Assembly: GCF_964213995.1 (NCBI RefSeq)
Contig: NC_135829.1
Span: 17,608,001 to 17,672,000 of the forward strand
Direction: 5' to 3'
Length of the DNA stretch: 64,000 bases
From: Mustelus asterias
Lineage: Eukaryota
This document shows positions 29,065 to 61,686 of this stretch, piece by piece. Within the stretch, counting starts at the first letter, position 1. Each line of letters opens with the position of its first letter. The position numbers and the translations under genes are program-made. Below the pieces are notes generated by a model, which saw only the letters and a list, made by a program, of their open reading frames with translations, made no database searches and was not told the DNA's origin.

Positions 29065-29353
29065 TCATTTCAAAGCAATCATTTATTGAGTGACTTCCCA
29101 TCGCATGAGTTGCATGTTGTGTATAATAAGCAGCAGAGCATTGTTCTGTCCATGGCGAGGGTTGGGTGGGGGGCGGAAATTGATCTTCGTAACTTCAGGA
29201 CAATCTGTGAAAGCTGTGGAGTGGCCTATCGCAGGATGGGTGAGAAGATTTCTCTGCTCTTCAAGCAACTTCCACATCACAAGCTGTGAAAACACATCTG
29301 ACATTGAGGGGCTCGGTCACGTCGCTCACACTCACGGTCCCTCTGGCCTCTCT
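29065..29353 (-). other. Ig receptor copy 1, terminal exon (3' UTR, or alternative tail ERGQRDRECERRDRAPQCQMCFHSL* ending 29277)
   Basis: Acceptor ctcttctcttactatccag| at 29354; minus-strand AATAAA at 29087-29082; 3' end approximate. Confidence 0.65.
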
Positions 29354-29506
29354 CTGGATAGTAAGAGAAGAGATCACATTGAATGGGTTCCAGTTCTGGC
29401 CGGGGACAAATAATAAAATGGCACTGTGATGTCACATGGGATAACGGAGCCTTAGATACAGCGCCGACTGGGAGGATTATACTCAAACCTTGAAACTACT
29501 TACATT

Positions 29507-29538
29507 TTAATTCTTGAACTTCACATTTGCCTCTGTCA
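29507..29538 (-). CDS. Ig receptor copy 1, cytoplasmic micro-exon VTEANVKFKN* (exon 29504-29538)
   Basis: ttttctgtattcttag| acceptor and |gtaagt donor 3 nt after TAA; phase-1 entry matches the TM exon. Confidence 0.75.
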
Positions 29539-29679
29539 CTAAGAATACAGAAAACAAAACAGGTGAAATATTTAATAACATATACTTCAAACAATGTCAA
29601 ACATCTGGAAGTGGGATTTGGCATTTTTAAGTCAAGGTTTTCCAAAACTCGATTGATTCAGGAATTATCCCTCTGGATT

Positions 29680-31180
29680 GGAATGCTGCCATTGTTATTC
29701 CATAATTTCAGATGGGTAGGATAGAGAAAGCAGAAAATAATAGACCCGTTAGTCTGATGTCTGTTGTGGGGAAGTTACTAGGATCTGCTACTGGAACTAA
29801 AGATCGAAAGATTTAGGAGCAGGAGTGTAGGCCATTCAGGCCCTTAAGCCTGCTCAGCCATTGGCTGATCTAATTGTGGTCTCAACTCTACTATCCTTTC
29901 TGCTTCATACAACCTCGTCATTCAGGAATCTCTCGAACTCAATGCAAACATGTAAGTTCCTTCTAACAAACCTAGTTTAATTTAATAAGTGGTTCCCTAA
30001 TTTGGTTGATAAGGGAGTGCATTTGGATGTGACCCATGTAGATTTCTAGACAGAACTCAATAAAGTTCCACACAAGAGGCTGTCATCAAAAATAAAGTGC
30101 ATGGAATTGGAGGCAATGACATGAATATGAAATTGGTTAGGAAGTATAGAAGGCAGACAATAGGGACAATAGGTACATAGTCACATTGGCAGGATGTAAA
30201 TATCAGTATCTCCCAGAACCCCAGCATTTCACTCTATTTATAAATGACTTAGATAAAGCAATAGCGACCTGGATATCTGAGCTTGCTGATGACACCAAGG
30301 CACATTAAGTAGTGCAGACTGCAGTCACAAGGGGACATTGATGGATTAAGTGTGTTAGCAAATTGGCAGCGACAGAGTTCAAAGTGGGGAAGTGTAAAGA
30401 CATCATCCACATCGCACCCAAGACTGCTCAGAGTATTTCGAAATGGTGAGAAGCTTAGAACTCTGGAGGAGCAGAGAGGGAATTAGGGTTCATTCATGTA
30501 AATCACTAAAGGTTCGTTGACAGGAACACAAAATGATGAAAAAGGCTGATGGGATGTTAACCCATCTCACAGAGGCTGGAGTACAAAGGGGGAGAAGTTA
30601 TGCTCCAGTTCTGGGCACTGCGCTTCTGGAAAGTTAATTTGATGAACAGAGATTCATCAGGATGCTAAAAGGAATAAATTATGGGGTTGGGCTTGAATAT
30701 ATTAAGTGGTGATCTAATTGAGGTGATTAAGATGTTTTCAGGATTACACCAGGAAGATCGAGAGAAACTGCTACCTCTGCTGTGAGAGTCTAAAATCAGG
30801 AGAGCCATCCGTGAGGTTAGAGCAGGGCTGTACAGAAAGCACATCTAAGGATAATGGAAATCTGGACCTCTTTCCCCAAAGGGTGTTAGTTTGGGGATCA
30901 ATTGAAAATTTCCTCGGTGAGACTGATAGGTTTTCTATGAGGTATATGAAGGGATGTGGAACCAAGGTGAGCGAATGGAGTAAAGATAGAGATAAAATTA
31001 AAATTAAAATTTAATTAAATGGCAGAACAAGCTCGATGGGCTGAAAGGAAAATTGGGCGGGGATCCTGGATTCAGGATTCAATCCTGGACCGGGGAGCGG
31101 CGCGGGCTTGGAGGGCCGAAGGGCCTGTTCCTGTGCTGTATTGTTCTTTGTTCTTTGTTGTCTCCTCCTGTTCCCATGAT
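29680..31180 (+). mobile_element. Old degraded CR1 in receptor intron (paralog ~52520-53870)
   Basis: Remnants of CR1 RT (aatagacccgttagtctg, ttgctgatgacaccaag, gttctgggcac). Confidence 0.65.
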
Positions 31181-31290
31181 CAAGACAAATGAGATGTGTT
31201 AGAATCATGACTTTAAAAATCATCATAATTAGTTGGTATTAAAATACAATTTTCCAGTTTGCAGAAACAGATTTTAAAACTCTTGCTTAC

Positions 31291-31407
31291 CTCTGGCAGA
31301 TTGTTGTCCTCTTCTGATTATGCAGATTACTCCATTAGAGCAAATTAATGCAGCCACATACAAAACCAGGATACCTACACGCATGGAACTGCAACTGGTG
31401 TCAGGAC
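31291..31407 (-). CDS. Ig receptor copy 1, transmembrane exon
   Basis: ttctcctcggtag| ... |gtaagc; 117 nt, phase 1-1; PDTSCSSMRVGILVLYVAALICSNGVICIIRRGQQSAR (hydrophobic helix followed by RR). Confidence 0.85.
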
Positions 31408-31637
31408 CTACCGAGGAGAAGCAACATTAAATTCAGGCTGTGCAATCCAGTGTTCTACATACGGCTCATTGCACTGGCTACCAAACCTTCCCCTCAGAAT
31501 CTAGAATAGTCAATGGCGAAGGAAGGAAATTGAACCAATTTACAACGGGTACAAACTGTACAAACAGACCCAGAATCTCTCAGCTGGAGCTCCTGACATT
31601 GAATGATTCATGTTGCCGATTGTCTTACTTTTTAGAG

Positions 31638-33154
31638 TATCAAGAAGCAGAGGTAATTTTAAGTGTTTGTACCGTTGGATATTAGAAATGAGTTATAGAT
31701 TTACATGAGTTTAGTGTTCCTGTATAAGGAAAGGTAAACCTCCAGTTAGATTCATATTAAACAATGTTTGCTTGTATGGGGGGATTTTTTAGAATCATAG
31801 AATACTACAGTGCAGAAGGAGGCCATTCGGCCCAGTGAGTCTGCACCAAACACAATCCCACCTTATTCCCATAACCCCACATATTTACCCTGCTAATCCC
31901 CCTGACACGAGAGTCTATTTATCATGGCCAATCAACCGAACCCGCAAATCTTTGGATTGTGGGAGAAAACCGAAGCACTCGGAGGAAACCCACCCAGACA
32001 CTGGGAGAATGTGCAAACCCCACACAGACAGGAATTGAACACAGGTCCTTAGTGCTGTGAGGCAGCAGTGCTAACCACTGTGCCACCATTTCAGTTCAAA
32101 CTGTGGTAGCATTATGCTAAGAGAGTTTACAGCGTGTAAAATAGATAAGAGCTTAGAGAAAGAATTAGATGTTGTTTAGCAACCAAGGTTCACTTATAGG
32201 GGAAGAGACCTCACTGTGTTCTTAGTTTAACTGAGCCAGAGTAGAAGGAGCTTAGCAGTGAGAGAGGGAACATCTCTCACTGCTTTGCCAGAAAAAAAGC
32301 CATATAATAGAGTAACGGGCAAGGAAGCAAGTGTCAGAAATCTAAAAACAGCCAGTTAAGGAGGATGAAGAGAAGTCTCCAGGAAGTCTGAAGTTAAAGG
32401 AACAGAGGAAACTGGAACGAGGTTACAGACAGAGTTGAGAAGCTGAAGAGTTTGCTGGTGAAAAACAGAGATATCTGAAATTATTTCAAAGTTTTTGAGA
32501 TTTACTATAGCCTGGAAAGTGACAGTTGAAGCAATTGTGAAGTAATTAGTGACTGGATCTTTTAGCGTTTGTGTGAAAGCTTGAAAGCATTCAAGACAAA
32601 GGAACATTGAAAGGAGAGCTATAAAACCTGGAAGTGAATCCTTGTTGGGAAAAGGTGAAAGAAATAATTGTTTGAAAGAAGATTCTAAAGTGTGTCTTTT
32701 TGAGAGTGGGGTTTGGAATCACTCATGTGGAAGTCAGAGTCCAGTAAGATCAGTTGGCTCATGGTGTGAGAATCATCTGGGGGGATTTGAGAAGAAGTCC
32801 ACAGAAGTTCACTTGGGTGGCGTTTGCCACTTGGTTTCAGAATGGAGTGTGTTTGACCACAGTTAGCCTGTGGTTTAAAGAATTGTGTGTTGAATGAGAC
32901 CATTATAGCATAAGATATATTTTGTAACCTCTGTCATCCTTAAAATCCATGTATATTTGTGAAGATAAGTGGGAATGAAGGAGTATTGTATCATAGTCAA
33001 ACTTTTCATGTTCAATAAATGTTTTTTTGTTGTTAAAAGCTAATTGTTAGTCCTATGACTCTCTTCATTCCCATTTTCTCAAAGATATGTAAAAGTTATG
33101 GTCTTTTGAGCCAAGGTTCCATTTGGGATCTTCCTGTCCAGTAGTGACATACAC
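31638..33154 (+). mobile_element. Solo LTR-like element (V-SINE inserted at ~31789-32088), 3' end shortened
   Basis: Paralog 54326-55859 ends tgtaaca and is flanked by TSD agag; TATA-like 32620-32626, AATAAA 33014-33019. Confidence 0.7.
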
Positions 33155-33168
33155 AGAGACACACTCAC

Positions 33169-33252
33169 TGTTAGTCACTGGAGATATTCCAGATGTTGAG
33201 GTGAGGGCGTCTGGGGATTCACTACTTGAGATTGGACTCCTTGTTAACAGGT
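33169..33252 (-). CDS. Ig receptor copy 1, second Ser/Thr/Pro stalk exon
   Basis: ttatgtttctcag| ... |gtgagt; 84 nt, phase 1-1; DLLTRSPISSSESPDALTSTSGISPVTN. Confidence 0.75.
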
Positions 33253-33398
33253 CTGAGAAACATAACTTTCCAGTTAGAATCTGGAATGATAAATGACGAA
33301 CGATGGAAATTGAACCAGTTTACAACAGGTACAAAATCCCTCAGCTGGAATTATTGATATTAAATGATTTAAATCATATCGTGCATTGTCTGACTGAC

Positions 33399-33878
33399 CT
33401 TCATTATTTGTAGGAGTCTCACTGCTGGTCACTGGAGATATTCCAGATGTTGAGGTGTGAGTGTCTGGAGAGTCTGCACTTTTTGTCACACTGAGGGAGA
33501 TGTTTGCTCTAATCTTCCAGACAGGTTTCCCTGAGACCACACCGTGTACAACACAGAGATAGCTCCCAGTGTCCAACTCCTTCACTGAGTGAATAGTGAG
33601 GTTGTGAGTCTGGATTTTATTTGTAGGACTGTTTGAGCTTTGGTTGGAGATTCTTTGTGATGACTCTTTATCCACACAGCAGCGTGTGTTAGAATGTAAG
33701 CTATAACCCTCAATATGAACAGAGTGCAGACACTTGTTAACATTTCCAGATATGATCCAAAACAGAGTGAAGGGCAGAGATTTTCCATTCTCAAACTGGC
33801 AGGGTAAAGTCACATTCTCTCCCTCTGCTACAGTCAGTGACGAGAAAGTTTCAACAGCAGAAAATACTTCATCCGAAT
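33399..33878 (-). CDS. Ig receptor copy 1, IgV domain (D2) plus stalk exon
   Basis: attgtttctag| ... |gtcagt; 480 nt, phase 1-1; V-set hallmarks GENVTLPC, LFW, NLTI, DTGSYLC; extra Cys at 50, 67, 68. Confidence 0.92.
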
Positions 33879-34029
33879 CTAGAAACAATATTGAAAAGAA
33901 TAATTTTACTCAAATAATCTCCAACGCGGTACTTTGTCAAAGGATTTCCAAAAGTCCATGTTAACTACATTCACTGCATTTCTCCATCTACTTTGTCTGT
34001 TACCTCCTCAACAGTTTATCAAGCACATC

Positions 34030-35083
34030 GGGCAGAATTTTTCGTTCTTTTGTGGCCCGCCAGCTCCACTGCCGGCTTTTCCCACCATAATTTTTGATAC
34101 TTGTTCAAAATAAATCCAGGAGGTGGGTCCCAAATGTCACGCTGGCGGGGCAGCCACTGATTGAACCTGCCCCTCCAGCAACCTCAGACTTCAAGAGACC
34201 CGGCATCTTTCAAACCAAACCAATAAAAATAAGAGGGGATCCCACCGCCCCCCCCCCCCACCTCCACGGACATGGGGAGCCCCCTCCCTCCCACCGCCCT
34301 CCACTTCCACGCAGACACCCCTTCCCAGCGATGCCCCCATCACCAGGGAATACCATCTCCCACAGACCACCCCATTGGAGCCCACTCTCTCCGGCAATTC
34401 CCTCTGGCACTGCAGTGTCAGGAGATGCTGCCAGGACAGTTTCCAGGCATGACCCTCTACCCCCTTGAGGCTGTACTTCCTGTGCACCCAAGGAGGGTTC
34501 TCTTCGCCAGGTCCCTGTTTGCGCCATGGTGGCACAGCCGTTAGAACTGCTGCCTCACAGCGCCAGGGACCCGGGTTCGATTCCCGGCTTGGGTCACTGT
34601 CTGTGCGGAGTCTGCATGTTCTCCCCGTGTCTGCGTGGGTTTCCTCCGGGTGCTCTGGTTTCCTCTCACATTCTGAAAGATGTGCTGTTTAGGTGCATTG
34701 GCCGTGCTAAATTCTCCCTCAGTGTAACCCAAACAGGCGCCACACGGATTTTCGCAGTGGATTTTCACAGTAACTTCATTGCAGTGTTAATGTAAGCCTA
34801 CCTGTGACTGTAATAAATAAACTTTAAAACTTTAAACTGTTTGTCAAAAGCTGTTATAAACCCCACTGAAGCGAGGGGGGAAATTGAAGGGTAAGGGGAT
34901 ACTAGAGTGGGAAGCCCGTTAATGAGATTAAAATGTGTGGCAATGGGATTCCCGACCTTTCATGGCAGGAACTAACATCACAGACGGGAAATCCCGACTG
35001 CGTAAAAGCCATTTGGGGACTCCCGTTGATTCTCCGGCCCCACCGCCATTCCCACTGACCAAAAACGGGGGAAAATCCTGGCC
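34030..35083. mobile_element. GC-rich MITE-like repeat with V-SINE inserted at ~34525-34836 (paralog ~56730-57806)
   Basis: Imperfect terminal inverted repeats gggcagaattttt / aaaatcctggcc; non-coding. Confidence 0.45.
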
Positions 35084-35276
35084 ATCATCTTTGGAATCTG
35101 TCGGTTGCGTCTCAATTTTTACTCTTTATTTACATGCTTGATAATTTCATCTCCATAAAGAATCTATAATTGTCTCGAATGGCAGCTATCTGTCCTAATA
35201 CCTCCCCTAATATCTCAGCTTAAATCGTCCCAACGTCCCGCTGTGATAATTCCCCCGATATCTCCAGTTCACTCAC

Positions 35277-35675
35277 CGTCCGGGTTTATCACAAAGAACA
35301 AGTTGTGGTTTTCACATCCCTCCCCTGTCAGGGTTTTCCAGTTTGGACATTTTGATGATTCTGTGGAATCCTGAACCGTGCAGGTAAATATCATCGAATC
35401 ATCACATAGCATCACAGCGAATGTCAGTGAATTCATTTCACCTCCATTTCTTTTGCATGTTTGACACTGCAGCTTCTCTTTCTGTTTCTCATGATCGATA
35501 TTTTCACAATCCTGCATTTTCTTCGCTCCTGTCTCACATTGTATTTTCTCAATTTCTGCTCCAGCACTGAAATCCCGAATGCTGCACAAGGTTCCGACAT
35601 TCCCAGCACCAGTGGGTGTGTTGCATTGCAGAGTGGTGACATCTCCTGATCCTCGAAAATGGACATAGGTGGATC
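35277..35675 (-). CDS. Ig receptor copy 1, Cys-rich atypical Ig domain (D1) exon
   Basis: ccttatccctgcag| ... |gtgagt; 399 nt, phase 1-1, open frame; GDVTTLQC ... SLTF ... DDSMIFTC; 10 Cys. Confidence 0.85.
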
Positions 35676-36007
35676 CTGCAGGGATAAGGACAGAATTGGA
35701 TGGAGATAAACAACATTCCATACAGGAAAGATAATTAAACCTTAATGTTCATCAAAGCCTCGCACAGTAAGTGAGTCTGATTTAGAGATTCCCCCATCAC
35801 ACAGTCTGGATAGAGACACCCCTTCCCCCTCCCCACATTATTACACTGAGTCTAAAAACTCTCACACATGGGAGAAAGAGGATGGTTGAAGTTGTTGACG
35901 GAAGGCCAATCTTCAAATGCTTCATCAATCCCCTTCCCTCCATCATAAGTTACATGTGGGACTGTGACTGATGATTACACAATGTTCATTCTCCAATCAC
36001 TATTGAG

Positions 36008-36592
36008 TATTTGAGTATAGGAGTAAGGATGTCTTGCTGCAGTTGCACAGGGTCTTGGTGAGGCCACACCGTGAGTATTGTGTGCAGTTTTGGTCTCCTA
36101 GTCTGAGGAAGGGCATTCTTGCTATTGAGGGAGTCCAGCGAAGGTTCACCAGACGGATTCCCAGAATGGCAGGGCTGACATATGAAGAGAGACTGGATCG
36201 GCTGGGCTTGTACTCACTGGAATCTAGAAGAATGAGAGCGGATCTCATAGAAACATATAAAATCCTGATGGGACTGGACAGGCTGGATGCAGGAAGAATG
36301 TTCCCGATATTGGGGAAGTTCAGAACTAGGGGTCACAGTTTAAGAATAAGAGGTAAGCCATTCAGGACCCAGATGAGGAAGAACTTCATTCAGAGAGTTG
36401 TGAACCTCTGGAAGGGCCAGTTCGTTAGACATGTTCAAGAGGGAGCTGGATGTGGCGCTGGTAGTTAAAGGGTATGGAGAGAAAGCGGGAGTGAGATACT
36501 GAAAGTGCATGATCTGCCAGGACCATATTGAATGGTGGTGCAGGCTGAGGGGCCGAATGGCCTTCTCCTGTAGCTATTTTCTATGCTTCTAT
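36008..36592 (+). mobile_element. CR1 3' fragment (paralog ~58733-59313)
   Basis: ORF 36034-36468 LVRPHREYCVQFWSP...DLIETYKI. Confidence 0.88.
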
Positions 36593-36759
36593 TCCTCAGA
36601 TACTGAAGCAGTCCTTTCCCACATGAAGTAAGACCGACAGAACGTTCAGGCTTGGGCTGATAAGTGACACACGATATTCACATCACACAAGTGTCTGGAA
36701 AATGACTAACTCCAAAAAAAAGAGAGAATTCTTTCCTTCCAAAAGGTGTTTGATACAGA

Positions 36760-38215
36760 GCCACAAAACTGCTTTGTGAGCAGCTCCAGGAATAAGAGGG
36801 ACTTCAGCAACATGGAGACGGAATTGGCTGAGCGACAGAGAACAGCGAGCAGTGATTAATGGATGTTTTTCTTGCTGGAGGGAGGTTTGTGGTGGAGTTG
36901 TCCAGGGGTCAGTGTTGGAACCGTTGCTTTTCCCGATATCTATTGCTGACCTATAACTGGGTGGACAGGGCACTATTACAAAGTTTGCAGATGATCCAAA
37001 ATCTGGAAACTTTGTGAACTGTGAGGAGGAGTATCAAACTTCAAAAACACGTAGACAAGTTGGTGCCGTGGGCAGACGGGTGGATGATGCAGTTCAATGC
37101 GGAGAAGTGTGAGGTGATTCAATTTGGTAGCAAGAACATGGAGAGACAATGTAAAATAAAGGTTACAACAGTAAAATGGATGCAGGAGCAGAGGGAGCTG
37201 GGAGTATATGTACATATATCATTGAAGGTGGCAAGGCAGTTGGAGAGCAGTTAATAAAGTATACAGCAACCTGGGCTTTATTAATAATGGCATAGAGTCC
37301 AAGAGCAAGGAGGTGATGTGGAATTTCTATAAGACGCTAGTTTGGCCTCAGTTGGAGTATTGCTTCCAGTTCTGGGTGCTGCACTTTCATAGAATCATAG
37401 AAACCCTACAGTGCAGAAAGAGGCCATTCGGCCCATCGAGTCTGCACCGACCACAATCCCACCCAGGCCCTCTCCCCAGATATTTACCCACTAATCCCTC
37501 TAACCTACACATCCCGGGACACTAAGGGGAAATTTAGCATGGCCAATTAACCTAACCCGCACATCTTTGGACTGTGGGAGGAAACCGGAGCAACCGGAGG
37601 AAACCCACGTAGACATGAGGAGAATGTGCAAACTCCACCACAGACAATGACCCAAGCCGGGAATCGAACCCAGGTCCCTGGAGCTGTGAAGCAGCAGTGC
37701 TAACCACTGTGCTACCATGCCGCCACTTTAGGAAGGATGCGATGGCATTGGAGAGAATGCAGAATATTCATAAGAATGATTCCAGGGATGATGAAGATAG
37801 ATTGAAGAAGTTGGCATTGTTTTCCTTGGAGAAGAGAAGGCTGAGAGGAGATTTGATCGAGATGTTCAAAATCATGAGGGGTTTGCACAGTGTAGATAGG
37901 GAGAAACTGTTCCCACTCATGGAAAGATCGAGAATGAGGGGACACATTTAGAGTAATTAGTAAAAGAAGCAAACTGATACGAGGAGAAGCTTTTCATGCA
38001 GTGAGTAGTTAAGGTCTGGAATGCACTGTCTGAGAGTGTGGAGGGGGCAGTTTTATTGAAGCATTTGGAAAGGAATTAGACTGTTAACTGTAATGGAAGA
38101 TAGTGCAAGGTTACGGCGAGAAGGCAGAGGAATGGTATTAGGTGAGATACTCATTCAGAGAACCGGTGTGGACAGAATGGGCCGAATGGCCTCCTGCACC
38201 GTTACAATTCTGTGA
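36760..38215 (+). mobile_element. Degraded CR1 RT/3' fragment with V-SINE inserted at 37388-37723 (copies in each array unit)
   Basis: MQFNAEKCEVIQFG, RRLRGDLIEMFKIM remnants; SINE flanked by TSD cacttt. Confidence 0.85.
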
Positions 38216-38907
38216 TCTCCCCTTGATATTCAATAGCAGCAACATTGTCAAATCATCGCCAACATTCTCAAGGTTACCATTGACCATCTCCATGACACTG
38301 TGGCTACAAGAGCAGGTCACAGACTGGGAATTCTGTGATGTATCGTTCACTTCCTGAATTCCCAAAATCTTTTCAACTTCTACAAGACACAGGTCAGTTG
38401 TATTTTAACACAGAGACAAGAATATTGCCGTAGGGTCGGAGTGAAGGAGATGTACCAAGCATAATGGAGAGTGATGAAAATCTGGATTCAAAGGGATTTG
38501 ATCTGCCTGTAACACTGAACAACCCACTCCGATATGTAATGTATTTTAATTGTGGTTCTCTGCCAGAACTAACTGACCCACTCGCTCTCCTGTATCTTTC
38601 GCATCTCAAATTCTTATCCAATTCTCAGTTGAAATACAGAATGATCTCTGTCTCAAGCACTGCCTGTCAAAGTATTCCATTGCCCCAACAACTCTCTGTG
38701 TAAAGAATTGCTCCGAATCTCTCCCCACTCTCTGAATGACAATATCAAACTGATGCTCCATGGTTACACCATATTAAACAGACACAGCAAAGACTGTGAG
38801 TCGACTGTGTTAAACATCTACACAAGAACAGCAATGCTTCGAATCTCTCTGTTTTTCTTTCCAGGTGAGGAACATTTGGAAGATTAATGGAAAGTATTCA
38901 TCCTTAC

Positions 38908-38962
38908 CAGCAACATGTTGGAAGAGAAGAAAAAGACCCACAAACAAAGCACCGAGTGCCAT
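38908..38962 (-). CDS. Ig receptor copy 1, signal-peptide exon (proximal leader L1)
   Basis: gaaATGg start; MALGALFVGLFLLFQHVA g|gtaagg; phase 1, joins the D1 exon in frame. Confidence 0.88.
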
Positions 38963-38999
38963 TTCAGATTCCTAGACCGTGCTTGCTGAGTGGTGGTTG

Positions 39000-39080
39000 C
39001 GTTCTTACTTCCCTATCTGTGAGAGAGAAGAGAAGCTGAACTTCTCGAAATGGCGTGAGAGATAATAGCTTCCTGTTTGA
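39000..39080 (-). promoter_or_regulatory. Putative TATA-less promoter region with ETS and GATA motifs (similar in all four leader modules)
   Basis: GGAAGT at 39012-39007, AGATAG at 39018-39013, AGATAA at 39060-39065, ACAGGAAG at 39076-39069, just upstream of the ATG. Confidence 0.45.
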
Positions 39081-39315
39081 CCAACTTAGGTGAAATGTGG
39101 GCTCTGATGTTGTGTTAATGCAACCGGGGCAGCAGTTGAGATGTTCGTTTGACCCTCCAACCAGAGACGTCACAGAAAGCTCCGAAATACAAAGAGCGGA
39201 ATTTAATGAAAAGAATTCAAAGTTCTGAACGAGTGAGAAAACAGGAGAGAAGCAAACGGGATTTGGGACGAGCTGTGAGTCACAATCTTATTGCTGTTCG
39301 TGCAAAATAAGAGCC

Positions 39316-40080
39316 AGGATGCGATTCTCGCCAATAGTGGGTGGAGCGGAGCCTAATCTCACCGGTGAAGCCGGCTACTGAGCTCATGAGGCACCATCCC
39401 GCAGGTGCTCCGATCTTCCTATCTACGCTCTCCCCATCAGTTGCTCCCTGTGTTGGTCTCCCCTGCCCCATCACCACATATATCAGCACCCCCCCGCCCC
39501 TCAATCCCCCGCTTTGCTGAGTTTCCTCCAGCCCCCCAATTGCCCATTCTGAAGTGTTTGTCCCCTCCCATTGCCCCCATTGCAGAGTTCCTCCCACTCT
39601 CCAATCCCCCCTTTGTGGACATTCCTCCACTAACCCCTTCAATCGTCACGGCTGCAGAGTTGCTCACTGCCCTCCACTGTGGAGCTCCCTCCCATTGCCT
39701 CCCCCCTCCCCTTTCCCCACCTCACTCATGCCCAAACCCCCTTAGGACCTGCCCCTTTAGCACTGCCCCTGGCATTCCCAGGATGCCTGGTTGGGCACTG
39801 CCAGGCTGGCACTGCCCAGGGGGCGTGGCCCGGCCCAGTCCCCGACAACCCGCTGATGGAGACCAGCTGTGATTCTCGCTGGTGGGGACCCCGACTGGTG
39901 AGTAGGTCAGGGCAAGTGAACCTGGACCATAGGGTCCCGGACTCACTCATGACAGTTCAATGATGTCTTTGATATTTCTGGGCGCAAAGCTAATGTCGTC
40001 GGCAAAACCGTGCCGGTGGATCAGGAGAGGCGAGAAACCAGGCATAAAACCAGTCTGGGGAGCCGGGAAGATTGCACCCA
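39316..40080. mobile_element. GC-rich MITE-like repeat upstream of leader (copies in each unit)
   Basis: Imperfect terminal inverted repeats ggatgcgattctc / gaagattgcaccc; C-rich non-coding interior. Confidence 0.4.
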
Positions 40081-43921: not shown

Positions 43922-43976
43922 CAGCAACATGTTGGAAGAGAAGAAAAAGACCCACAAACAAAGCACCGAGTGCCAT
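43922..43976 (-). CDS. Orphan leader exon L2 (unit lacks gene body)
   Basis: Identical MALGALFVGLFLLFQHVA exon with intact GTAAGG donor. Confidence 0.7.
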
Positions 43977-48592: not shown

Positions 48593-48647
48593 CTGCAACA
48601 TGTTGGAAGAGAAGAAAAAGACCCACAAACAAAGCACCGAGTGCCAT
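48593..48647 (-). CDS. Orphan leader exon L3 (unit lacks gene body)
   Basis: Same peptide, gca g|gtaagg donor; surrounding unit more diverged than L1/L2. Confidence 0.7.
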
Positions 48648-49692: not shown

Positions 49693-50038
49693 GGGGCGGC
49701 ACAGTAGCACAGTGGTTAGCACTGCTGCTTCACAGCTCCAGGGACCTGGGTTCGATTCCCGGCTCGGGTCACTGTCTGTGTTGAGTTTGCACATTCTCCT
49801 CGTGTCTGCGTGGGTTTCCTCTGGGTGCTCCGGTTTCCTCCCACAGTCCAAAGATGTGCGGGTTAGGTTAATTGGCCATGCTGAATTTACCCTTAGTGTC
49901 CCGGGTTGCGTAGGTTAGAGGGATTAGCGGGTAAATATGTAGGGATATGGAGATAGGGCCTGGGTGGGATTGTGGTCGGTGCAGACTCGATGGGCCCGGT
50001 GGCCTCTTTCTGCACTGTAGGGTTTCTATGATTCTATG
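49693..50038 (+). mobile_element. V-SINE insertion specific to unit 3
   Basis: Absent at the equivalent site ggcaaaaccgtgcc in the units at ~40001, ~45014 and ~62725. Confidence 0.88.
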
Positions 50039-51909
50039 AAAACCATGCCGGTGGATCAGGAGAGGCGAGAAACCGGGCGTAAAATCGGTCTGGGGAGCCG
50101 GGAAGATTGCACCCAAAGTGTACATTCTGAGTGTGCCTCTGTGCATCATGATGAAAGTGCGTAACACCGGAGCAGACATATCAACACATCCCGCTCCCCC
50201 AGCATGATGGAGATACTAACCATCTGGAAACACAAGGACCAGGATTTTCCAGTCTCGCCGCTCCTGGCTCAGAGCGATCTCCAGGTGCCCCAAAGGAATT
50301 AAGTTCCCAGCTGGCAGTGGGAACCCTGCTGCTGAGCTCCCGGCTCCAGGGGAGACATTAATTTGCCAGACGTTCCCCAGTTGGGTGGCAATTCCGCTCC
50401 TGAGACCAATCAGAGGCTGGCAGCTCCCCATTGTTGGCAGCACCACCGGGCGCCGTGTCTGCTGCTGGTAATCCAACCGAGCCTTCACCAGGGGGTCATC
50501 GTGGGGGCCCCTGGAGAAGGACAAGTGCTGGATGGGATGGGGGCTGTGGGGAGTGGTTTGTCAGTAAGGGAGGGGCAATGGGTGGGAGGAAAGAGTGGGG
50601 GATGGTGACTCTCAGCAGGCCCCCTCTGCCATTCCCGATGCCAGATCCCTTGATCTTGTGCTGAGTGACAATAAGCACCTCCCACTCCACACTCGGCCAC
50701 AAGCAAACCTGACAGGGATAGCTTTCAATCTCCCCAGATGGTGAGTCCTCCACCCCAGCCCCAGCTATGGGTTGAATACCAGTGACAGTCGGATGAAGCC
50801 GTGAGTTGCTCAGTCAAAGGCGTCAATCGGTATCCGGTGGGAAGGCAGCCCAGAGCCTTCCTGTCCCAGATTAAACTGGGTGGAGGCAGGGAAGCAGCAG
50901 GGGCCATATCCCACACCCTCAGAGCCAAACAATTGCACCTCCCCCCGCCCCCCCCCCCCCCGCTCATCTCACCTTCCTCTCCCCCTCCCATTCACCATCC
51001 ACACCCTGAGAACTTGCCTTGGAGGTAAAGCATTAAATTCTGTCCCACTGCGTCTAAACAGTGGAAGTGCATGATACTCCATCACTGTCTTTAACCAGTA
51101 TCTCAGCAAAGAAACAGGAAACATTGGAACTTCAGCCACTGTGGGCCATTCAGTGCCTGTATTTAGTTTGAGTTCATTGCATTTTTGCCTCAGTTTTCTC
51201 CTCTTGAGGCTCTCACTCTTCCTGTGTGAGCGTGGGTTAGAAATCGCTGCACGTTGTGTGATGTTGGGACCATCACATCCCCACACCCTGATCATGTTCA
51301 ATGTGCATGGGCAAAGCAGGACCAGTAAGCGCAGGAGGAGGCCATTCAGCCCCTCGAGCCTGTTCGTCCTTTCAATGAGACCATGGTAAATCTTCACCGT
51401 AACTCCATGTATCTCCCTTTGCCCCAAATCCCTTGGAACCCTTGACTGACCAAATGTTATCAGTCTATGCCTTGAAGGCTCCAGTTCTCCCACAGAGTCC
51501 ACAGCATTTTGGGACAAAAGTTTCAGATTTCCACTAGCCTTGGTGGTAAAAAAAATGCTTCTTGATTTCAAATCGAGATGATGAATCTCTAATTTTAGAA
51601 AAAAACATGGAAAAACTACAGCACAAACAGGCCCTTCGGCCCACAAATTTTAATTTTAAGAGTATCTTCCCCTGTTTTTCATCTGTATCGACTCTGTCAA
51701 ATCATTTTAACACTGGAATGGATAAAGGATTGGTAAACTAACGGGAAACAATGAAACAGGATAAATGGGATATTTTCAGGTTGGCAAAGAGTAACTAGTG
51801 AAGTGATTGGCAATTCAAAGCTTAAAGCCAGTGTCGTAACCTCGCTGGGGTCAATTGATTTATTCCATTAGATTGGGATAAAATTCCTACTCAGCTCATC
51901 ATTTCATTA

Positions 51910-52347: not shown

Positions 52348-52379
52348 TTAATTCTTGAACTTCACATTTGCCTCTGTCA
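52348..52379 (-). CDS. Ig receptor copy 2, cytoplasmic micro-exon VTEANVKFKN* (exon 52345-52379)
   Basis: Identical to the copy 1 exon and splice sites. Confidence 0.75.
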
Positions 52380-53978: not shown

Positions 53979-54095
53979 CTCTGGCAGATTGTTGTCCTCT
54001 TCTGATTATGCAGATTACTCCATTAGAGCAAATTAATGCAGCCACATACAAAACCAGGATACCTACACGCATGGAACTGCAACTGGTGTCAGGAC
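53979..54095 (-). CDS. Ig receptor copy 2, transmembrane exon
   Basis: Identical to 31291-31407. Confidence 0.85.
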
Positions 54096-55859: not shown

Positions 55860-55869
55860 AGAGATACAC

Positions 55870-55953
55870 TGTTAGTCACTGGAGATATTCCAGATGTTGA
55901 GGTGAGGGTGTCTGGGGATTCACTACTTGAGACTGGACTCCTTGTTACCTGGT
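55870..55953 (-). CDS. Ig receptor copy 2, second stalk exon (donor weak; may be skipped or read through)
   Basis: Acceptor ttatgttcctcag|; DQVTRSPVSSSESPDTLTSTSGISPVTN; the in-phase donor position reads GTGTAT. Confidence 0.5.
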
Positions 55954-56099: not shown

Positions 56100-56579
56100 C
56101 TTCATTATTTGTAGGAGTTCCACTGCTGGTCACTGGAGATATTCCAGATGTTGAGGTGTGAGTGTCTGGAGAGTCTGCACTTTTTGTCACACTGAGGGAG
56201 ATGTTTGCTGTAATCTTCCAGACAGGTTTCCCTGAAGCCTGACCGTGTACAACACAGAGATAGCTCCCAGTGTCCAACTCCTTCACTGAGTGAATAGTGA
56301 GGTTGTGAGTCTGGATTTTATTTGTTGGATTGTCTGAGCTTTGGATAGAGATTCTTTGTGATGACTCTTTATCCACACAGCAGCGTGTGTTAGAATGTAA
56401 GCTATAATCCTCAATATGAACAGAGTGCAGACACTTGTTAACATTTCCAGATATGATCCAAAACAGAGTGAAGGGCAGAGATTTTCTATTCTCAAACTGG
56501 CAGGGTAAAGTCACATTCTCTCCCTCTGCTACAGTCAGTGACGAGAAAGTTTCAACTGTAGAAAATACTTCATCCGAAT
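56100..56579 (-). CDS. Ig receptor copy 2, IgV domain (D2) plus stalk exon
   Basis: 480 nt, canonical |gtaagt donor; 10 aa differences from copy 1. Confidence 0.92.
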
Positions 56580-57999: not shown

Positions 58000-58398
58000 C
58001 GTCCGGGTTTATCACAAAGAACAAGTTGTGGTTTTCACATCCCTCCCCTGTCAGGGTTTCCCAGTTTGGACATTTTGATGATTCTGTGGAATCCTGAACC
58101 GTGCAGGTAAATATCATTGAATCATCACATAGCATCACAGCGAATGTCAGTGAATTCATTTCACCTCCATTTCTTTTGCATTTTCGACACTGCAGCTTCT
58201 CTTTCTGTTTCTCATGATCGATATTTTCACAATCCTGCATTTTCTTCGCTCCTGTCTCACATTGTATTTTCTCAATTTCTGCTCCAGCACTGAAATCCCG
58301 AATGCTGCACAAGGTTCCGACATTCCCAGCACCAGTGGGTGTGTTGCATTGCAGAGTGGTGACATCTCCTGATCCTCGAAAATGGACATAGGTGGATC
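58000..58398 (-). CDS. Ig receptor copy 2, Cys-rich D1 exon
   Basis: 399 nt, open frame, same splice sites; all 10 Cys kept; 3 aa differences from copy 1. Confidence 0.85.
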
Positions 58399-61300
58399 CT
58401 GCAGGGATAAGGACAGAATTGGATGGAGATAAATAACATTCCGTACAGGAAAGATAATTAAACCTTAACGTCCATCAAAGCCTCGCACAGTAAGTGAGTC
58501 TGATTAGAGATTCCCCCATCACACAGTCTGGATAGAGACACCCCTTCCCCCTCCCCACAGTATTACACTGAGTCTAAAAACTCTCACACATGGGCGAAAG
58601 GAGGATGGTTGAAGTTGTTGACAGAAGGCCAATCTTCAATTGCTACATCAATCCTCTTCCCCCCATCATAAGTTCCATGTGGGACTGTGACTGATGATTA
58701 CACAATGTTCATTCTCCAATCACTATTGAGTATTTGAGTATAGGAGTAAGGATGTCTTGCTGCAGTTGCACAGGGTCTTGATGAGGCCACACCGTGAGTA
58801 TTGTGTGCAGTTTTGGTCTCCCAGTCTGAGGAGGACATTCTTGCTATTGAGGAAGTCCAGCGAAGGTTCACCAGACGGATTCCCAGAATGGCAGGGCTGA
58901 CATATGAAGAGAGAATGGATCGGCTGGGCTTGTACTCACTGGAATCTAGAAGAATCAGAGCGGATCTCATAGAAACATATAAAATCCTGATGGGACTGGA
59001 CAGGCTGGATTCAGGAAGAAGGTTCCCGATGTTGGGGAAGTTCAGAACTAGGGTCACAGTTTAAGAATAAGGGGTAAGCCATTCAGGACCCAGATGAGGA
59101 AGAACTTCATTCAGAGAGTTGTGAACCTCTGGAGGGGCCAGTTCGTTAGACATGTTCAAGAGGGAGTGGATGTGGCGCTGGTAGTTAAAGGGTATGGAGA
59201 GAAAGCGGGAGTGAGATACTGAAAGTGCATGATCTACCAGGATCATATTGAATGGTGGTGCAGGCTGAGGGGCCGAATGGCTTTCTCCTGTACCTATTTT
59301 CTCTGCTTCTATTCCTCAGATACTGAAGCAGTCCTTTCCCACATGAAGTAAGACCGACAGAACGTTCAGGCTTGGGCTGATAAGTGACACGTGACCTTCA
59401 CATCACACAAGTGTCTGGAAATGACTAACTCCAAAAAAAAGAGAGAATTCTTTCCTTCCAAAAGGTGTTTGATACAGAGCCACAAAACTGCTTTGTGAGC
59501 AGCTCCAGGAATAAGAGGGACTTCAGCAACATGGAGATGGAATTGGCTGAGCGACAGAGAACAGCGAGCAGTGATTAATGGATGTTTTTTTTGCTGGAGG
59601 GAGGTTTGTGGTGGAGTTGTCCAGGGGTCAGTGTTGGAACCCTTGCTTTTCCCGATATCTATTGCTGACCTATAACAGGGTGTACAGGGCACTATTACAA
59701 AGTTTGCAGATGATCCAAAATCTGGAAGCTTTGTGAACTGTGAGGAGGAGAGTATCAAACTTCAAAAACACGAAGACAAGTTGGTGCCATGGGCAGACGG
59801 GTGGATGTTGCAGTTCAATGTGGAGAAGTGTGAGGTGATTCAATTTGGTAGCAAGAACATGGAGAGACAATGTAAAATAAAGGTTACAACAGTAAAATGG
59901 ATGCAGGAGCAGAGGGAGCTGGGTGTATATGTACATATATTATTGAAGGTGGCAAGGCAGTTGGAGAGCAGTTAATAAAGTATACAGCAACCTGGGCTTT
60001 ATTAATAATGGCATAGAGTCCAAGAGCAAGGAGGTGATGTGGAATTTCTATAAGACGCTAGTTTGGCCTCAGTTGGAGTATTGCTTCCAGTTCTGGGTGC
60101 TGCACTTTCATAGAATCATAGAAACCCTACAGTGCAGAAAGAGGCCATTCGGCCCATCGAGTCTGCACCGACCACAATCCCACCCAGGCCCTCTCCCCAG
60201 ATATTTACCCACTAATCCCTCTAACCTACACATCCCGGGACACTAAGGGGCAATTTAGCATGGCCAACTAACCTAACCCGCACATCTTTGGACTGTGGGA
60301 GGAAACCGGAGCATCCGGAGGAAACCCACGTAGACATGAGGAGAATGTGCAAACTCCACACAGACAATGACCCAAGCCGGGAATCAAACCCAGCTCCCTG
60401 GAGCTGTGAAGCAGCAGTGCTAACCACTGTGCTACCATGCCGCCACTTTAGGAAGGATGCGATGGCATTGGAGAGAATGCAGAATATTCACAAGAATGAT
60501 TCCAGGGATGATGATGATAGATTGAAGAAGTTGGGATTGTTTTCCTTGGAGAAGAGAAGGCTGAGAGGAGATTTGATCGAGATGTTCAAAATCATGAGAG
60601 GTTTGCACAGTGTAGATAGGGAGAAACTGTTCCCACTCATGGAAAGATCGAGAATGAGGGTATAAGTTTAGAGTAATTAGTGAAAGAAGCAAACTGATAC
60701 GACGAGAAGATTTTCATGCAGTGAGTAGTTAAGGTCTGGAATGCGCTGCCTGAGAGTGTGGAGGGGGCAGGTTTATTGAAGCATTTGAAAAGGAATTAGA
60801 CTGTTAACTGTAAAGGAAGATAATGCAGGGTTACGGGGAGAAGGCAGAGGAATGGTATTAGGTGAGATGCTCATTCAGAGAACCGGTGTGGACAGAATGG
60901 GCCGAATGGCCTCCTGCACCATTACAATTCTGTGAGCTCCCCTTGATATTCAATAGCAGCAACATTGTCAAATCATCGCCAACATTCTCGAGGTTACCAT
61001 TGACCATCCCCATGACACTGTGGCTACAAGAGCAGGTCACAGGCTGGGAATTCTGTGATGTATCGTTCACTTCCTGAATTCCCAAAATCTTTTCAACTTC
61101 TACAAGACACAGGTCAGGAGTTGTATTTTAACACAGAGACAAGAATATTGCCGTAGAGTCGGAGTGAAGGAGATGTACCAAGCATAATGGAGAGTGATGA
61201 AAATCTGGATTCAAAGGGATTTGATCTGCCTGTAACACTGAACAACCCACTCCGAAATGTAATGTATTTTAATTGTGGTTCTCTGCCAGAACTAACTGAG

Positions 61301-61631
61301 CAACTCGCTCTCCTGTATCTTTCACAACCTCAAACTCTTATCCAATTCTCAGTTGAAATACAGAATGATCTCTGTCTCAAGCACTGCCTGTCAAAGTATT
61401 CCATTGCCCCAACAACTCTCTGTGTAAAGAATTGCTCCGAATCTCTCCCCACTCTCTGAATGACAATATCAAACTGATGCTCCATGGTTACACCATATTA
61501 AACAGACACAGCAAAGACTGTGAGCCGACTATGTTAAACATCTACACGAGAACAGCAATGCTTCGAATCTCTCTGTTTTTCTTTCCAGGTGAGGAACATT
61601 TGGAAGATTAATGGAAAGTATTCTTCCTTAC

Positions 61632-61686
61632 CTGCAACATGTTGGAAGAGAAGAAAAAGACCCACAAACAAAGCACCGAGTGCCAT
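61632..61686 (-). CDS. Ig receptor copy 2, signal-peptide exon (L4)
   Basis: MALGALFVGLFLLFQHVA g|gtaagg. Confidence 0.88.

What the first reader, a model, noticed from the sequence alone, without database searches (positions are those of the whole stretch)
29065..61686. Unassigned tandem family of two-Ig-domain membrane receptors (main candidate system)
Seen: six exons with canonical splice sites join in frame (55+399+480+84+117+32 = 1167 nt, 388 aa): signal peptide, 10-Cys Ig-like D1, IgV D2, S/T/P stalk, TM, 18-aa tail, then a terminal exon with AATAAA. There are two copies, both with open frames, and the array runs off the window. The ORF track shows only fragments. Known: this layout resembles non-rearranging leukocyte receptors (CD300/TREM/pIgR-like, TIM, skate MDIR), but I cannot match the D1 cysteine pattern to any of them. 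Inference: an expanding, possibly chondrichthyan-specific immune receptor family.
Basis: partly seen in the sequence, partly recalled or inferred. Interest (0 to 1): 0.9.

Follow-up and report, generated by a model that had tools for sequence, protein, structure and literature searches.

The report
Shark-only paired Ig receptor genes
The window holds two neighbouring copies of a shark gene for a short-tailed cell-surface receptor with two outer domains; it has a long-tailed twin gene, relatives were found only in sharks, and no study of it turned up.

Summary
On the minus strand lie two tandem copies (22.7-kb period, about 97% identical) of a six-exon gene. It encodes a leader, a 10-Cys D1, a V-set D2, an S/T/P stalk, a TM segment and an 18-aa tail. 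All introns are phase 1 with AG/GT sites. Copy A equals, exon by exon, a public RefSeq model: Mustelus asterias LOC144480428 isoform X3, 388 aa, "uncharacterized".

Three searches (D1 alone, whole-protein profile, long tail alone) found relatives only in sharks, 13 species across Galeomorphii and Squalomorphii, none with a functional name.

The family has two forms. Long-tail members carry four invariant tyrosine motifs ending in NPIY. Short-tail members, the window's type, carry a conserved C-S/T-x-x-R...LVLY...LICI(D/H)G transmembrane segment. TM exons group by type across species (100/96). D1 and D2 exons group by species. This is the pattern of paired receptors with homogenised ectodomains.

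My reading is that the window genes are the adaptor-coupled, activating-type partners. That is inferred.

- No RNA evidence could be obtained.
- Mustelus has Asn where most sharks have the membrane Asp.
- A-versus-B dN/dS is 0.87.

I rate it a new variant of a known kind, of moderate interest.

The parts
28341..41261 (-). Duplication unit A: gene body of copy A plus its nearest leader module
   Evidence: Self-BLAST: 28341-41261 aligns to 51126-63978 in three pieces at 96.4-96.9% identity
51126..63978 (-). Duplication unit B: gene body of copy B plus a leader module that reaches the window's end
38908..38962 (-). Copy A leader exon, candidate 1 (55 nt, MALGALFVGLFLLFQHVA + G, donor gtaagg)
43922..43976 (-). 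Copy A leader exon, candidate 2 (intact)
48593..48647 (-). Copy A leader exon, candidate 3 (intact)
35277..35675 (-). Copy A exon D1: 133-codon Cys-rich domain with 10 Cys, no Pfam match
33399..33878 (-). Copy A exon D2: V-set Ig domain plus the start of the S/T/P stalk
33169..33252 (-). Copy A exon E4: 84-nt stalk exon, skipped in public isoforms X4 and X6
31291..31407 (-). Copy A exon E5: membrane-proximal Cys, Arg at the outer TM boundary, TM helix with Ser-Asn, then RRGQQSAR
29507..29538 (-). Copy A exon E6 coding part (VTEANVKFKN, then stop)
29082..29087 (-). AATAAA downstream of copy A; the terminal untranslated exon is not verified
   Evidence: read directly
31079..31167 (-). Alternative terminal coding exon of public isoforms X1 and X4. 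It lies in a stretch that is largely not aligned to copy B and resembles a repeat at 16527-16595
61632..61686 (-). Copy B leader exon
58000..58398 (-). Copy B exon D1 (395 of 399 nt identical to A)
56100..56579 (-). Copy B exon D2 (464 of 480 nt identical to A; 10 amino-acid differences)
55870..55953 (-). Copy B exon E4 (donor GTGTAT, weaker than A's GTGAGT)
53979..54095 (-). Copy B exon E5 (117 of 117 nt identical to A)
52348..52379 (-). Copy B exon E6 coding part (32 of 32 nt identical to A)
36600..51597 (-). Three stacked modules of about 5 kb, each with upstream sequence and a leader exon. Modules 1 and 2 are 99.3% identical over 5802 bp; module 3 is about 92%

Best explanation
The window carries two young tandem copies of the short-tail member of a shark-restricted family of type I membrane glycoproteins.

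Each copy encodes, in order:
- a signal peptide;
- a Cys-rich N-terminal domain D1, probably a much-altered Ig-like domain;
- a V-set Ig domain D2;
- a probably O-glycosylated Ser/Thr/Pro stalk with an optional 28-residue exon;
- a Cys just outside the membrane;
- a transmembrane helix with Arg at its outer edge and a polar position in its inner half (Asp in most sharks, Asn here);
- an 18-residue tail without tyrosine.

A sister gene in the same species (LOC144480561) has a 91-93% identical outer part. Its helix is plainly hydrophobic, and its tail of about 160 residues carries conserved tyrosine motifs.

I read this as a paired-receptor system. Both forms would bind the same, unknown ligand through D1-D2. 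The long form would signal through its own phosphotyrosine motifs. The short form, having no motifs, would signal by assembling through its polar membrane residues, and perhaps its outer Cys, with a separate signalling chain.

Shown here: the gene structure, the two forms, their age, the shark-only distribution, and the within-species homogenisation of the ectodomain exons.

Inferred: ligand sharing, adaptor coupling, the direction of signalling, and expression in immune cells.
For: Gene model:
- AG/GT sites, phase-1 introns and open frames in both copies.
- Identity to public model P0001, 388 aa.

Distribution. All hits with shared architecture are from sharks:
- D1 by HMMER against 1.84 billion representatives: 8 hits at E<=0.001. 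Five are shark proteins. Three are weak multi-stretch hits to large bacterial or unnamed repeat proteins.
- Whale-shark full length: 21 of 21 hits.
- Ten-sequence profile: 27 of 27 hits, the weakest at E 1e-110.
- Long tail alone: 15 of 15 hits.
- 13 species in all, including Squalomorphii and Galeomorphii.

Two forms:
- 7 of 7 short-tail sequences share C-S/T-x-x-R and LV(L/F)Y.
- The inner polar position is D in 4, H in 2 and N in 1. All 10 long-tail sequences have V there.
- The TM-exon tree splits short from long at 100/96, and in 100% of 200 bootstrap trees.
- The short tail VMEA(N/K)VK is shared by Scyliorhinus, Pristiophorus and Mustelus.

Homogenised ectodomains:
- In the D1 and D2 trees, short and long forms of one species group together: Mustelus, S. 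torazame, Heptranchias and Pristiophorus at 100/98-100 in both trees.
- Stegostoma (97/90) and Hemiscyllium (99/99) do so in the D2 tree.
- Mustelus long versus window: D1 91-93%, D2 90.6%.

Long tail:
- Four invariant tyrosine motifs, VAYxVT, TEHVYC, YSxI and MEENPIY, in 10 of 10 sequences.

D2:
- A true V-set domain.
Against: - No expression evidence.
- Mustelus has Asn, not the Asp seen in 4 of 7 species, at the inner membrane position. Classical charge pairing may be weakened here.
- The known activating partners that I recall carry a basic residue in the membrane and pair with an acidic adaptor. An Asp in the receptor is unusual for that scheme.
- The membrane-proximal motif fits the ITIM consensus (recalled) in only 5 of 11 long-tail rows. 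It does not fit in Mustelus (LPYSVF). 'Inhibitory' is therefore not established.
- A-versus-B dN/dS is 0.87 (18 replacement and 6 silent changes), which cannot be told from neutral drift.
- The zero differences in E5 sit in an identical patch that also covers 131 nt of intron. They show no exon-specific constraint.
- Copy B has a weaker E4 donor. No protein with its diagnostic residues is in the two clusters I read.
- The D1 fold is unknown.
Confidence: 0.6

Rival explanations
1. The short-tail forms are non-signalling decoys or modulators. They would bind the same ligand, or pair with the long form through the membrane-proximal Cys and polar helix residues, and so tune long-form signalling without any adaptor.
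For: The tail has 18 residues and no tyrosine. A membrane-proximal Cys is conserved in 7 of 7 short forms. The inner polar residue varies (D, H, N) across species, which is loose for a strict salt bridge.
Against: The boundary Arg and LV(L/F)Y are conserved in 7 of 7 species across the deepest shark split. That argues for a specific intramembrane contact, as in adaptor-coupled receptors.
Confidence: 0.15
2. The family is not an immune receptor. It is a mucin-stalked adhesion or barrier glycoprotein of epithelium, endothelium or the reproductive tract. The NPxY and tyrosine motifs would then serve endocytosis or cytoskeletal linkage.
For: There are no tissue data. The C-terminal MEENPIY is an NPxY-type motif, known (recalled) from integrin beta tails and endocytic receptors. 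The stalk is 56-57% Ser/Thr/Pro, counted by hand on the translations. NCBI names some members 'serine-rich adhesin'-like and 'GPI-anchored protein pfl2' on composition.
Against: The short/long pairing with homogenised ectodomains and tandem copy-number change are, from general knowledge, typical of leukocyte receptor clusters. The language-model neighbours are leukocyte V-set receptors: JAML, VSIG4, BTLA, CD7 and G6F at 0.94-0.97. These are leads only.
Confidence: 0.15
3. One or both window copies are young, drifting duplicates on the way to pseudogenes. The functional short-tail gene type survives in other sharks but is decaying in Mustelus.
For: dN/dS is 0.87. D2 divergence (3.3%) is not below intron divergence (about 2.6%). 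The inner TM residue has changed from Asp to Asn and its neighbour from Ile to Ser. Copy B has a weakened E4 donor and is absent from the protein clusters I read. With only 24 substitutions, an open frame is not strong evidence.
Against: Both copies keep all six exons, all AG/GT sites and four intact leader exons. RefSeq predicts several isoforms for copy A. Replacements in a V domain can equally reflect diversifying selection.
Confidence: 0.2
4. The family is a strongly diverged orthologue of a named vertebrate receptor, for example a PD-1/CD28-family member, JAML, a VSIG or BTLA.
For: D2 alone aligns over its full length to PD-1 at E 0.004 and to VISTA at E 0.05. The family profile hits TCR V-alpha at E 6e-5 and PD-1 at E 0.007. 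Atlas neighbours are listed.
Against: These are framework-level V-set similarities. D1 and the tail have no relative outside sharks. The architecture (extra D1) and the tail motifs differ from PD-1. A 2025 paper reports a shark PD-1 gene (PMC12151841; only the start of its abstract was seen). Whether it differs from this family I did not compare.
Confidence: 0.07

Closest known systems
RefSeq models LOC144480428 (isoforms X1, X3, X4, X6) and LOC144480561 (X1-X3) of Mustelus asterias, with 'uncharacterized protein' models in 12 other shark species
   Same: Copy A is identical, exon by exon, to isoform X3 (388 aa). The domain order is the same in all.
   Different: These are automatic predictions without name, function or publication. 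Copy B has no counterpart in the clusters I read.
Paired activating/inhibitory Ig-superfamily receptors (KIR/LILR, SIRP, PILR, CD300, TREM; teleost NITR and LITR; skate MDIR). Family properties are recalled.
   Same: Near-identical ectodomains sit on a short-tail form with polar or charged TM residues and on a long-tail form with tyrosine motifs. The genes are tandemly arranged, and ectodomains are homogenised within species.
   Different: No sequence relationship beyond the V-set fold. The membrane-distal D1 has no detectable relative. The conserved TM signature combines a boundary Arg with an inner Asp/His/Asn, not a single central Lys or Arg. The long tail ends in NPIY and fits the ITIM consensus in only some species.
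PD-1 and TCR V-alpha type V-set domains (solved structures)
   Same: D2 shares the V framework: B-strand Cys, Trp, the R/Q-I-S ... L-T-I ... D-T-G-x-Y-L-C pattern. E values are 6e-5 to 0.007.
   Different: The similarity is weak and framework-only. D2 has three extra Cys, including a CC pair, and no J-like FGxG motif (read). PD-1 has a single domain and other tail motifs.
TIM (HAVCR) and other IgV-plus-mucin-stalk receptors (recalled)
   Same: A V domain followed by a Ser/Thr/Pro-rich stalk, a TM segment and a tyrosine-bearing tail in the long form.
   Different: No TIM chain among the 60 best PDB matches shown for D2. The Cys pattern is different. There is an extra D1.

Membership tests
Pfam V-set / Ig domain (D2) | Score above the curated gathering threshold of PF07686 or PF13927 | tested here: met
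   V-set 34.5 bits (cut-off 26) and Ig_3 37.1 bits (cut-off 30) for window D2
Ig-like fold (D1) | Significant profile or structure match to an Ig-type beta sandwich | tested here: inconclusive
   Window D1 matches no Pfam family at E<=10. Of 10 D1 sequences, 3 match 'ig' (best E 0.0038) and 2 match I-set. The D1 profile against PDB gives titin at E 0.041, on the F-strand motif only. hhalign against D2 gives probability 0.2%. C17 and C98 are placed like the B and F strand Cys, and one species has Trp at position 30.
Shark two-domain receptor family (unnamed; LOC144480428 / LOC144480561 type) | D1 signature followed by V-set D2 with a CC pair, an S/T/P stalk and a single TM | tested here: met
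   Window D1 is 48-93% and D2 about 51-91% identical to members from other species. The alignment is co-linear.
Short-tail subtype of that family | TM exon with C-S/T-x-x-R, LV(L/F)Y and a polar inner residue; short tail without Tyr | tested here: met
   The window E5 groups with the 6 other short-type TM exons at 100/96. The inner residue is Asn instead of Asp or His.
Paired activating/inhibitory receptors (functional class) | Short-tail and long-tail genes with near-identical ectodomains in one genome | tested here: met
   D1 is 91-93% and D2 90.6% identical between the window copies and P0023. They group by species in the trees.
Paired activating/inhibitory receptors (functional class) | Charged TM residue in the short form that recruits an ITAM or YxxM adaptor | tested here: inconclusive
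   The boundary Arg is present. The inner Asp is replaced by Asn in Mustelus. Adaptor binding cannot be tested with these tools.
Paired activating/inhibitory receptors (functional class) | ITIM or ITSM in the long form | tested here: inconclusive
   The membrane-proximal motif fits (I/V/L/S)xYxx(I/V/L) in 5 of 11 long-tail rows, not in Mustelus. The four invariant Tyr motifs do not fit the recalled ITIM or ITSM consensus.
Paired activating/inhibitory receptors (functional class) | Expression on leukocytes | not testable with these tools
CD300 / TREM / pIgR-like V domains (including skate MDIR) | Specific sequence similarity, and the extra C-C' disulfide next to the conserved Trp (recalled) | tested here: not met
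   pIgR appears only as a partial hit at E 0.13. No CD300 or TREM chain is among the 60 best of 100 PDB hits. None is among the 38 profile hits. The D2 Cys pattern is C...W...C...CC...C. MDIR sequences themselves were not available to compare.
PD-1 / CD28 family | Single IgV ectodomain, and for PD-1 an ITIM plus ITSM tail (recalled) | tested here: not met
   Two ectodomains. The tail motifs differ. Similarity is only E 0.004-0.007.

The most novel reading that the evidence does not exclude
A receptor pair that arose before the split of the two great shark lineages and is confined to sharks. For that whole time its binding exons have been repeatedly homogenised between the signalling-tail gene and the short-tail gene. 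Its short-tail partner uses an unusual membrane code: an outer Arg, an inner Asp/His/Asn and an outer Cys. That would point to an assembly partner other than the classical acidic adaptors, for example a basic-helix chain or the long form itself. Its outermost domain would be a new Cys-knotted derivative of the Ig fold, or a new fold, that carries the ligand site.
Probability: 0.3. Interest if true: 0.7.

Novelty: new variant of a known kind. Interest (0 to 1): 0.5.

Why it matters
Paired Ig-type receptors are a recurring solution in vertebrate innate immunity. Almost nothing of the kind has been characterised in sharks, the oldest living lineage with antibody-based immunity.

This family offers a dated, shark-wide example with three features that can be tested directly:
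- a conserved and unusual transmembrane code in the short form;
- a long tail with four invariant tyrosine motifs ending in NPxY;
- clear discordance between TM-exon and ectodomain-exon trees, which measures gene conversion between partners.

It also gives annotators a name and a subtype rule for about 30 'uncharacterized' or misnamed shark protein clusters.

If expression turns out to be non-immune, or the Mustelus copies are decaying, the interest falls to that of an ordinary lineage-specific gene family.

Tried and rejected
Steps that led nowhere:
- RNA evidence. The look-up of sequencing runs listed 22 runs. None is on record as RNA. Four runs of one organism hold 47-87% of the words and look like genomic DNA, possibly the source. 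The 18 small-share rows (0.05-0.15), from several organisms, were never laid, so I do not know what they hold.
- ESM Atlas for window D1. The stored whale-shark homologue gave only generic V-set leukocyte-receptor neighbours and no structure.
- hhalign of D1 against D2 found no relation.
- phmmer of D1 against PDB gave one hit at E 0.64.
- I looked for relic long-tail exons in the window by tblastn with four long-tail proteins. None was found at E<=0.01 beyond the TM exon.
- I looked for exon-specific constraint between A and B. It was not demonstrable.
- The first 28 kb of the window holds LINE and SINE ORFs only, and no neighbour gene for synteny.

Identities rejected:
- UrIg/UrIg2, whose architecture is V-C1-C2-C3 (abstract and outline of PMC12227049).
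- NKp30, CD300, TREM and TIM, none among the PDB hits shown.
- The three large bacterial or unnamed repeat-protein hits to D1, which are 20-29% identical and multi-stretch. I take them as compositional or generic beta-sandwich noise.

Literature:
- Full-text searches found no paper on this family. That includes six LOC identifiers, which gave 0 papers.
- Subscription journals are not covered. Supplements were closed and I did not ask for them. Gene lists in supplements of shark genome papers could mention these loci.
- The MDIR paper (Cannon and colleagues, 2006) is recalled and was not seen. Only a citing paper appeared in a listing (PMC3031540).

Full report
WHAT IS IN THE SEQUENCE

The finding lies on the minus strand. 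Reading the strand directly and tabulating the sites by script gives this model for copy A:
- D1, 35675-35277 (399 nt)
- D2, 33878-33399 (480 nt)
- stalk exon E4, 33252-33169 (84 nt)
- TM exon E5, 31407-31291 (117 nt)
- E6, 29538-29507 (32 nt, ending in TAA)
- AATAAA at 29087-29082

Copy B runs as follows:
- leader 61686-61632 (55 nt)
- D1 58398-58000
- D2 56579-56100
- E4 55953-55870
- E5 54095-53979
- E6 52379-52348

All acceptors are AG and all donors GT, and every intron is in phase 1. No in-frame exon of either copy holds a stop. The one weak site is the E4 donor of copy B, GTGTAT against GTGAGT in A.

The leader exon occurs four times in the window, each with ATG, an identical peptide and a gtaagg donor: 61686, 48647, 43976 and 38962. 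Three of the four sit upstream of copy A.

A self-comparison shows the reason. A unit of gene body plus leader module (28341-41261) is repeated at 51126-63978, at 96.4-96.9% identity. Between the two lie two further 5-kb leader modules. Modules 1 and 2 are 99.3% identical over 5802 bp, and module 3 is about 92%.

tblastn of the D1 and D2 translations finds exactly two full copies of each in the window. There are no N runs.

IT IS A REAL, ALREADY PREDICTED GENE

I searched exon by exon and did not join the exons.

D1 alone, run by HMMER against 1.84 billion representative proteins, gave 8 hits at E<=0.001. The best, P0001, is 388 aa long and 100% identical over D1. Read beside my exon translations, it is the same in every exon. 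Its source name is 'uncharacterized protein LOC144480428 isoform X3 [Mustelus asterias]'. The window is therefore from the starry smooth-hound, and copy A is that locus.

The public isoforms differ in two ways. X4 and X6 skip E4. X1 and X4 use another terminal exon at 31167-31079, which lies in a stretch largely unaligned to copy B and resembles a repeat at 16595-16527.

I found no protein with copy B's diagnostic residues in the two 90% clusters where it should fall. Those clusters hold 3 and 4 members.

THE DOMAINS

D2 is a V-set Ig domain: Pfam V-set 34.5 bits against a cut-off of 26, and Ig_3 37.1 against 30.
- Against solved structures, D2 alone gives only framework-level matches. ROBO1 is partial at E 1e-4, PD-1 covers the full domain at E 0.004, and VISTA scores 0.05.
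- The ten-sequence family profile gives TCR V-alpha at E 6e-5 and PD-1 at 0.007. All listed matches lie within profile positions 160-332, that is D2 and the start of the stalk.

D1 has 10 Cys in both window copies. Nine positions are usual in the family, and the tenth (position 90) is found only in Mustelus.

D1 matches no Pfam family at E<=10. Of ten D1 sequences, 3 match 'ig' (best E 0.0038), 3 match Ig_2 and 2 match I-set. A D1 profile against PDB gives three hits at E<=10: titin 0.041, DSCAM 1.1 and LRIG1 1.1. All fall on the stretch 'S-x-V-F-T-C-x-x-Q-D-S', which looks like an Ig F strand. hhalign of D1 against D2 finds nothing.

Three further points suggest a derived Ig domain:
- Cys17 and Cys98 sit where the B and F strand Cys would be.
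- Heptranchias has Trp where the others have Cys30.
- Heptranchias lacks Cys30 and Cys73 together, and Hemiscyllium lacks Cys56 and Cys70 together. This hints at extra disulfides 30-73 and 56-70 inside a Lys/Glu-rich insert.

So 'Ig-like D1' is plausible but not shown.

The stalk is 56-57% Ser/Thr/Pro, counted by hand on the translations.

WHO ELSE HAS IT

Three further searches agree with the D1 search:
- The whale-shark member, full length: 21 of 21 hits at E<=0.001 are shark proteins.
- A ten-sequence profile: 27 of 27 hits at E<=0.01 are shark proteins, with the weakest at 1e-110 and nothing between that and the threshold.
- The cytoplasmic tail of the Mustelus long form alone: 15 of 15 hits among 125 candidates are shark proteins.

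Thirteen species appear:
- Mustelus asterias
- Scyliorhinus torazame and S. canicula
- Carcharodon carcharias
- Cetorhinus maximus
- Rhincodon typus
- Stegostoma tigrinum
- Hemiscyllium ocellatum
- Chiloscyllium punctatum and C. plagiosum
- Heterodontus francisci
- Heptranchias perlo
- Pristiophorus japonicus

The last two are Squalomorphii, and Mustelus is Galeomorphii. No skate, ray, chimaera or bony vertebrate protein appeared.

Two cautions apply. The word-based searches score only the 8000 candidates that share most words. I also cannot see which proteomes the collections hold.

Every source name I saw is 'uncharacterized', apart from two compositional misnomers: 'serine-rich adhesin for platelets-like' and 'putative GPI-anchored protein pfl2'.

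TWO FORMS, OLD AND CONSERVED

The proteins fall into two forms.

Long forms are about 490-560 aa. Their TM helix is fully hydrophobic (...IVCVVVLICIVGVICIIRRKRQ...). Their tail of about 160 residues has four tyrosine motifs that are invariant in 10 of 10 sequences: VAYxVT, TEHVYC(L)I, YSxI and MEENPIY. A fifth, membrane-proximal tyrosine is nearly invariant.

Short forms are the window's type. They have a different TM exon and a tail of roughly 10 to 40 residues.
- All 7 of 7 share C-S/T-x-x-R just outside or at the edge of the helix, followed by LV(L/F)Y.
- They have a polar residue where the long forms have Val: Asp in Scyliorhinus, Pristiophorus, Heterodontus and Heptranchias, His in Stegostoma and Hemiscyllium, and Asn (with a neighbouring Ser) in Mustelus. 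All 10 long forms have Val there.
- Three species share the short tail V(M/T)EA(N/K)VK.

A tree of the 38-residue TM-exon segment splits short from long at 100/96 support, and in 100% of 200 bootstrap trees.

Trees of D1 and D2, each built on its own exon, group short and long forms by species instead.
- Mustelus, S. torazame, Heptranchias and Pristiophorus group at 100/98-100 in both trees.
- Stegostoma (97/90) and Hemiscyllium (99/99) group in the D2 tree.
- The two N-terminally truncated orectolobiform short models fell below my 80% length filter for D1. That tree has 20 rows of a possible 22.

In Mustelus, the long form P0023 (LOC144480561, on a contig of the same length as P0001) is 91-93% identical to the window copies in D1 and 90.6% in D2.

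Both types thus predate the deepest split of living sharks, while the binding exons are kept alike within each species. The simplest cause is repeated gene conversion or exon exchange. This is the classic picture of paired receptors.

HOW IT PROBABLY WORKS

Shown: the window genes encode type I membrane proteins with D1-D2 on a mucin-like stalk and a tail without tyrosine. They have a long-tail twin.

Inferred:
- Both forms see the same ligand.
- The long form signals through phosphotyrosine docking. NPxY is a PTB-type motif and YxxM a p85-type motif, as in Mustelus NPIYSKM. The membrane-proximal LxYxxV fits the ITIM consensus in 5 of 11 rows, but not in Mustelus. All motif meanings are recalled.
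- The short form signals through a partner chain, held by its boundary Arg, its inner polar residue and perhaps its outer Cys.

WHAT SPEAKS AGAINST THIS, OR LEAVES IT OPEN
- There is no RNA evidence.
- Mustelus has lost the Asp.
- An acidic residue in the receptor is not the usual activating code.
- Between A and B there are 18 replacement and 6 silent changes, giving dN/dS 0.87. D2 (3.3%) is no more conserved than the introns (about 2.6%).
- The identical E5 lies in an identical patch that includes 131 nt of intron. Selection on the Mustelus copies is therefore not demonstrated.
- Of the 10 D2 differences, about half fall in CDR-like loops (placed by eye). That is too few for a test.

COMPARISON WITH WHAT IS KNOWN

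By mechanism, the closest kind is the paired Ig-superfamily receptor: KIR/LILR, SIRP, PILR, CD300, TREM, teleost NITR and LITR, and skate MDIR (recalled). By descent, I can place the family in none of them.
- No CD300, TREM, TIM or NKp30 chain is among the PDB matches shown.
- UrIg/UrIg2 has a V-C1-C2-C3 architecture (abstract of PMC12227049).
- PD-1 similarity is at framework level only.
- The Atlas neighbours of the whale-shark member (JAML, VSIG4, BTLA, CD7, G6F; 0.94-0.97) are leads only.

Full-text searches found no paper on the family. Supplements were closed and were not consulted.

EARLIER NOTES OF THIS SCAN

They had already marked the three leader modules, the ten-Cys D1, replacements in the IgV loops, the Arg-bearing TM helix and the E4 donor difference. 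One note also places an NPxY/YxxM tail about 16 kb beyond the window's end.

VERDICT

I rate it a new variant of a known kind, with interest 0.5.

Noticed in passing
window 36600-51597: Three stacked modules of about 5 kb, each with an intact leader exon and upstream sequence, lie ahead of copy A. Two are 99.3% identical over 5.8 kb. This could be a very recent duplication, alternative first exons, or an assembly expansion.
   Followed up: partly
window 31079-31167 (also 16527-16595): The alternative terminal coding exon of public isoforms X1 and X4 (tail GGDNKEQRTIQHRNRPFGPPSPRRSPVQD) lies in a stretch largely unaligned to copy B. It resembles a repeat elsewhere in the window. It is likely exonisation of a mobile element, or a prediction artefact.
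   Followed up: partly
window 55838-55870 vs 33140-33169: Immediately after the E4 donor the two copies differ in sequence, not just by point changes (A gtgagtgtgtctctg..., B gtgtatctcttgttacag...). I did not test that.
   Followed up: no
window 30692-31159 vs 53532-53847: This is the only long stretch of the gene body where A and B do not align in the self-comparison. It is an indel or insertion in intron 5.
   Followed up: no
window 13949-16525 (+), 20066-21119 (-), 5292-5810 (-), 4401-4739 (-): Long ORFs with what look by eye like the endonuclease, reverse-transcriptase and C-terminal motifs of LINE elements. The first 28 kb shows no host-gene exon by ORF inspection.
   Followed up: partly
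P0002 (Heptranchias perlo, 683 aa): This short-tail model has the D1-D2 unit twice in tandem. It is either a real four-domain variant or two neighbouring genes fused by the predictor.
   Followed up: no
P0003, P0028, P0030 (Pristiophorus japonicus): Public long-tail isoforms that lack D2 altogether (D1-stalk-TM-tail). This suggests that D1 can be displayed alone.
   Followed up: no
window D2, positions 31, 113, 114, 123 of the exon translation: At these sites copy B agrees with the long-tail gene P0023 and copy A differs. At sites 7, 57, 78 and 82 copy A agrees and B differs. Both copies have therefore gained replacements since duplication, or exchanged patches with the long-tail gene.
   Followed up: partly
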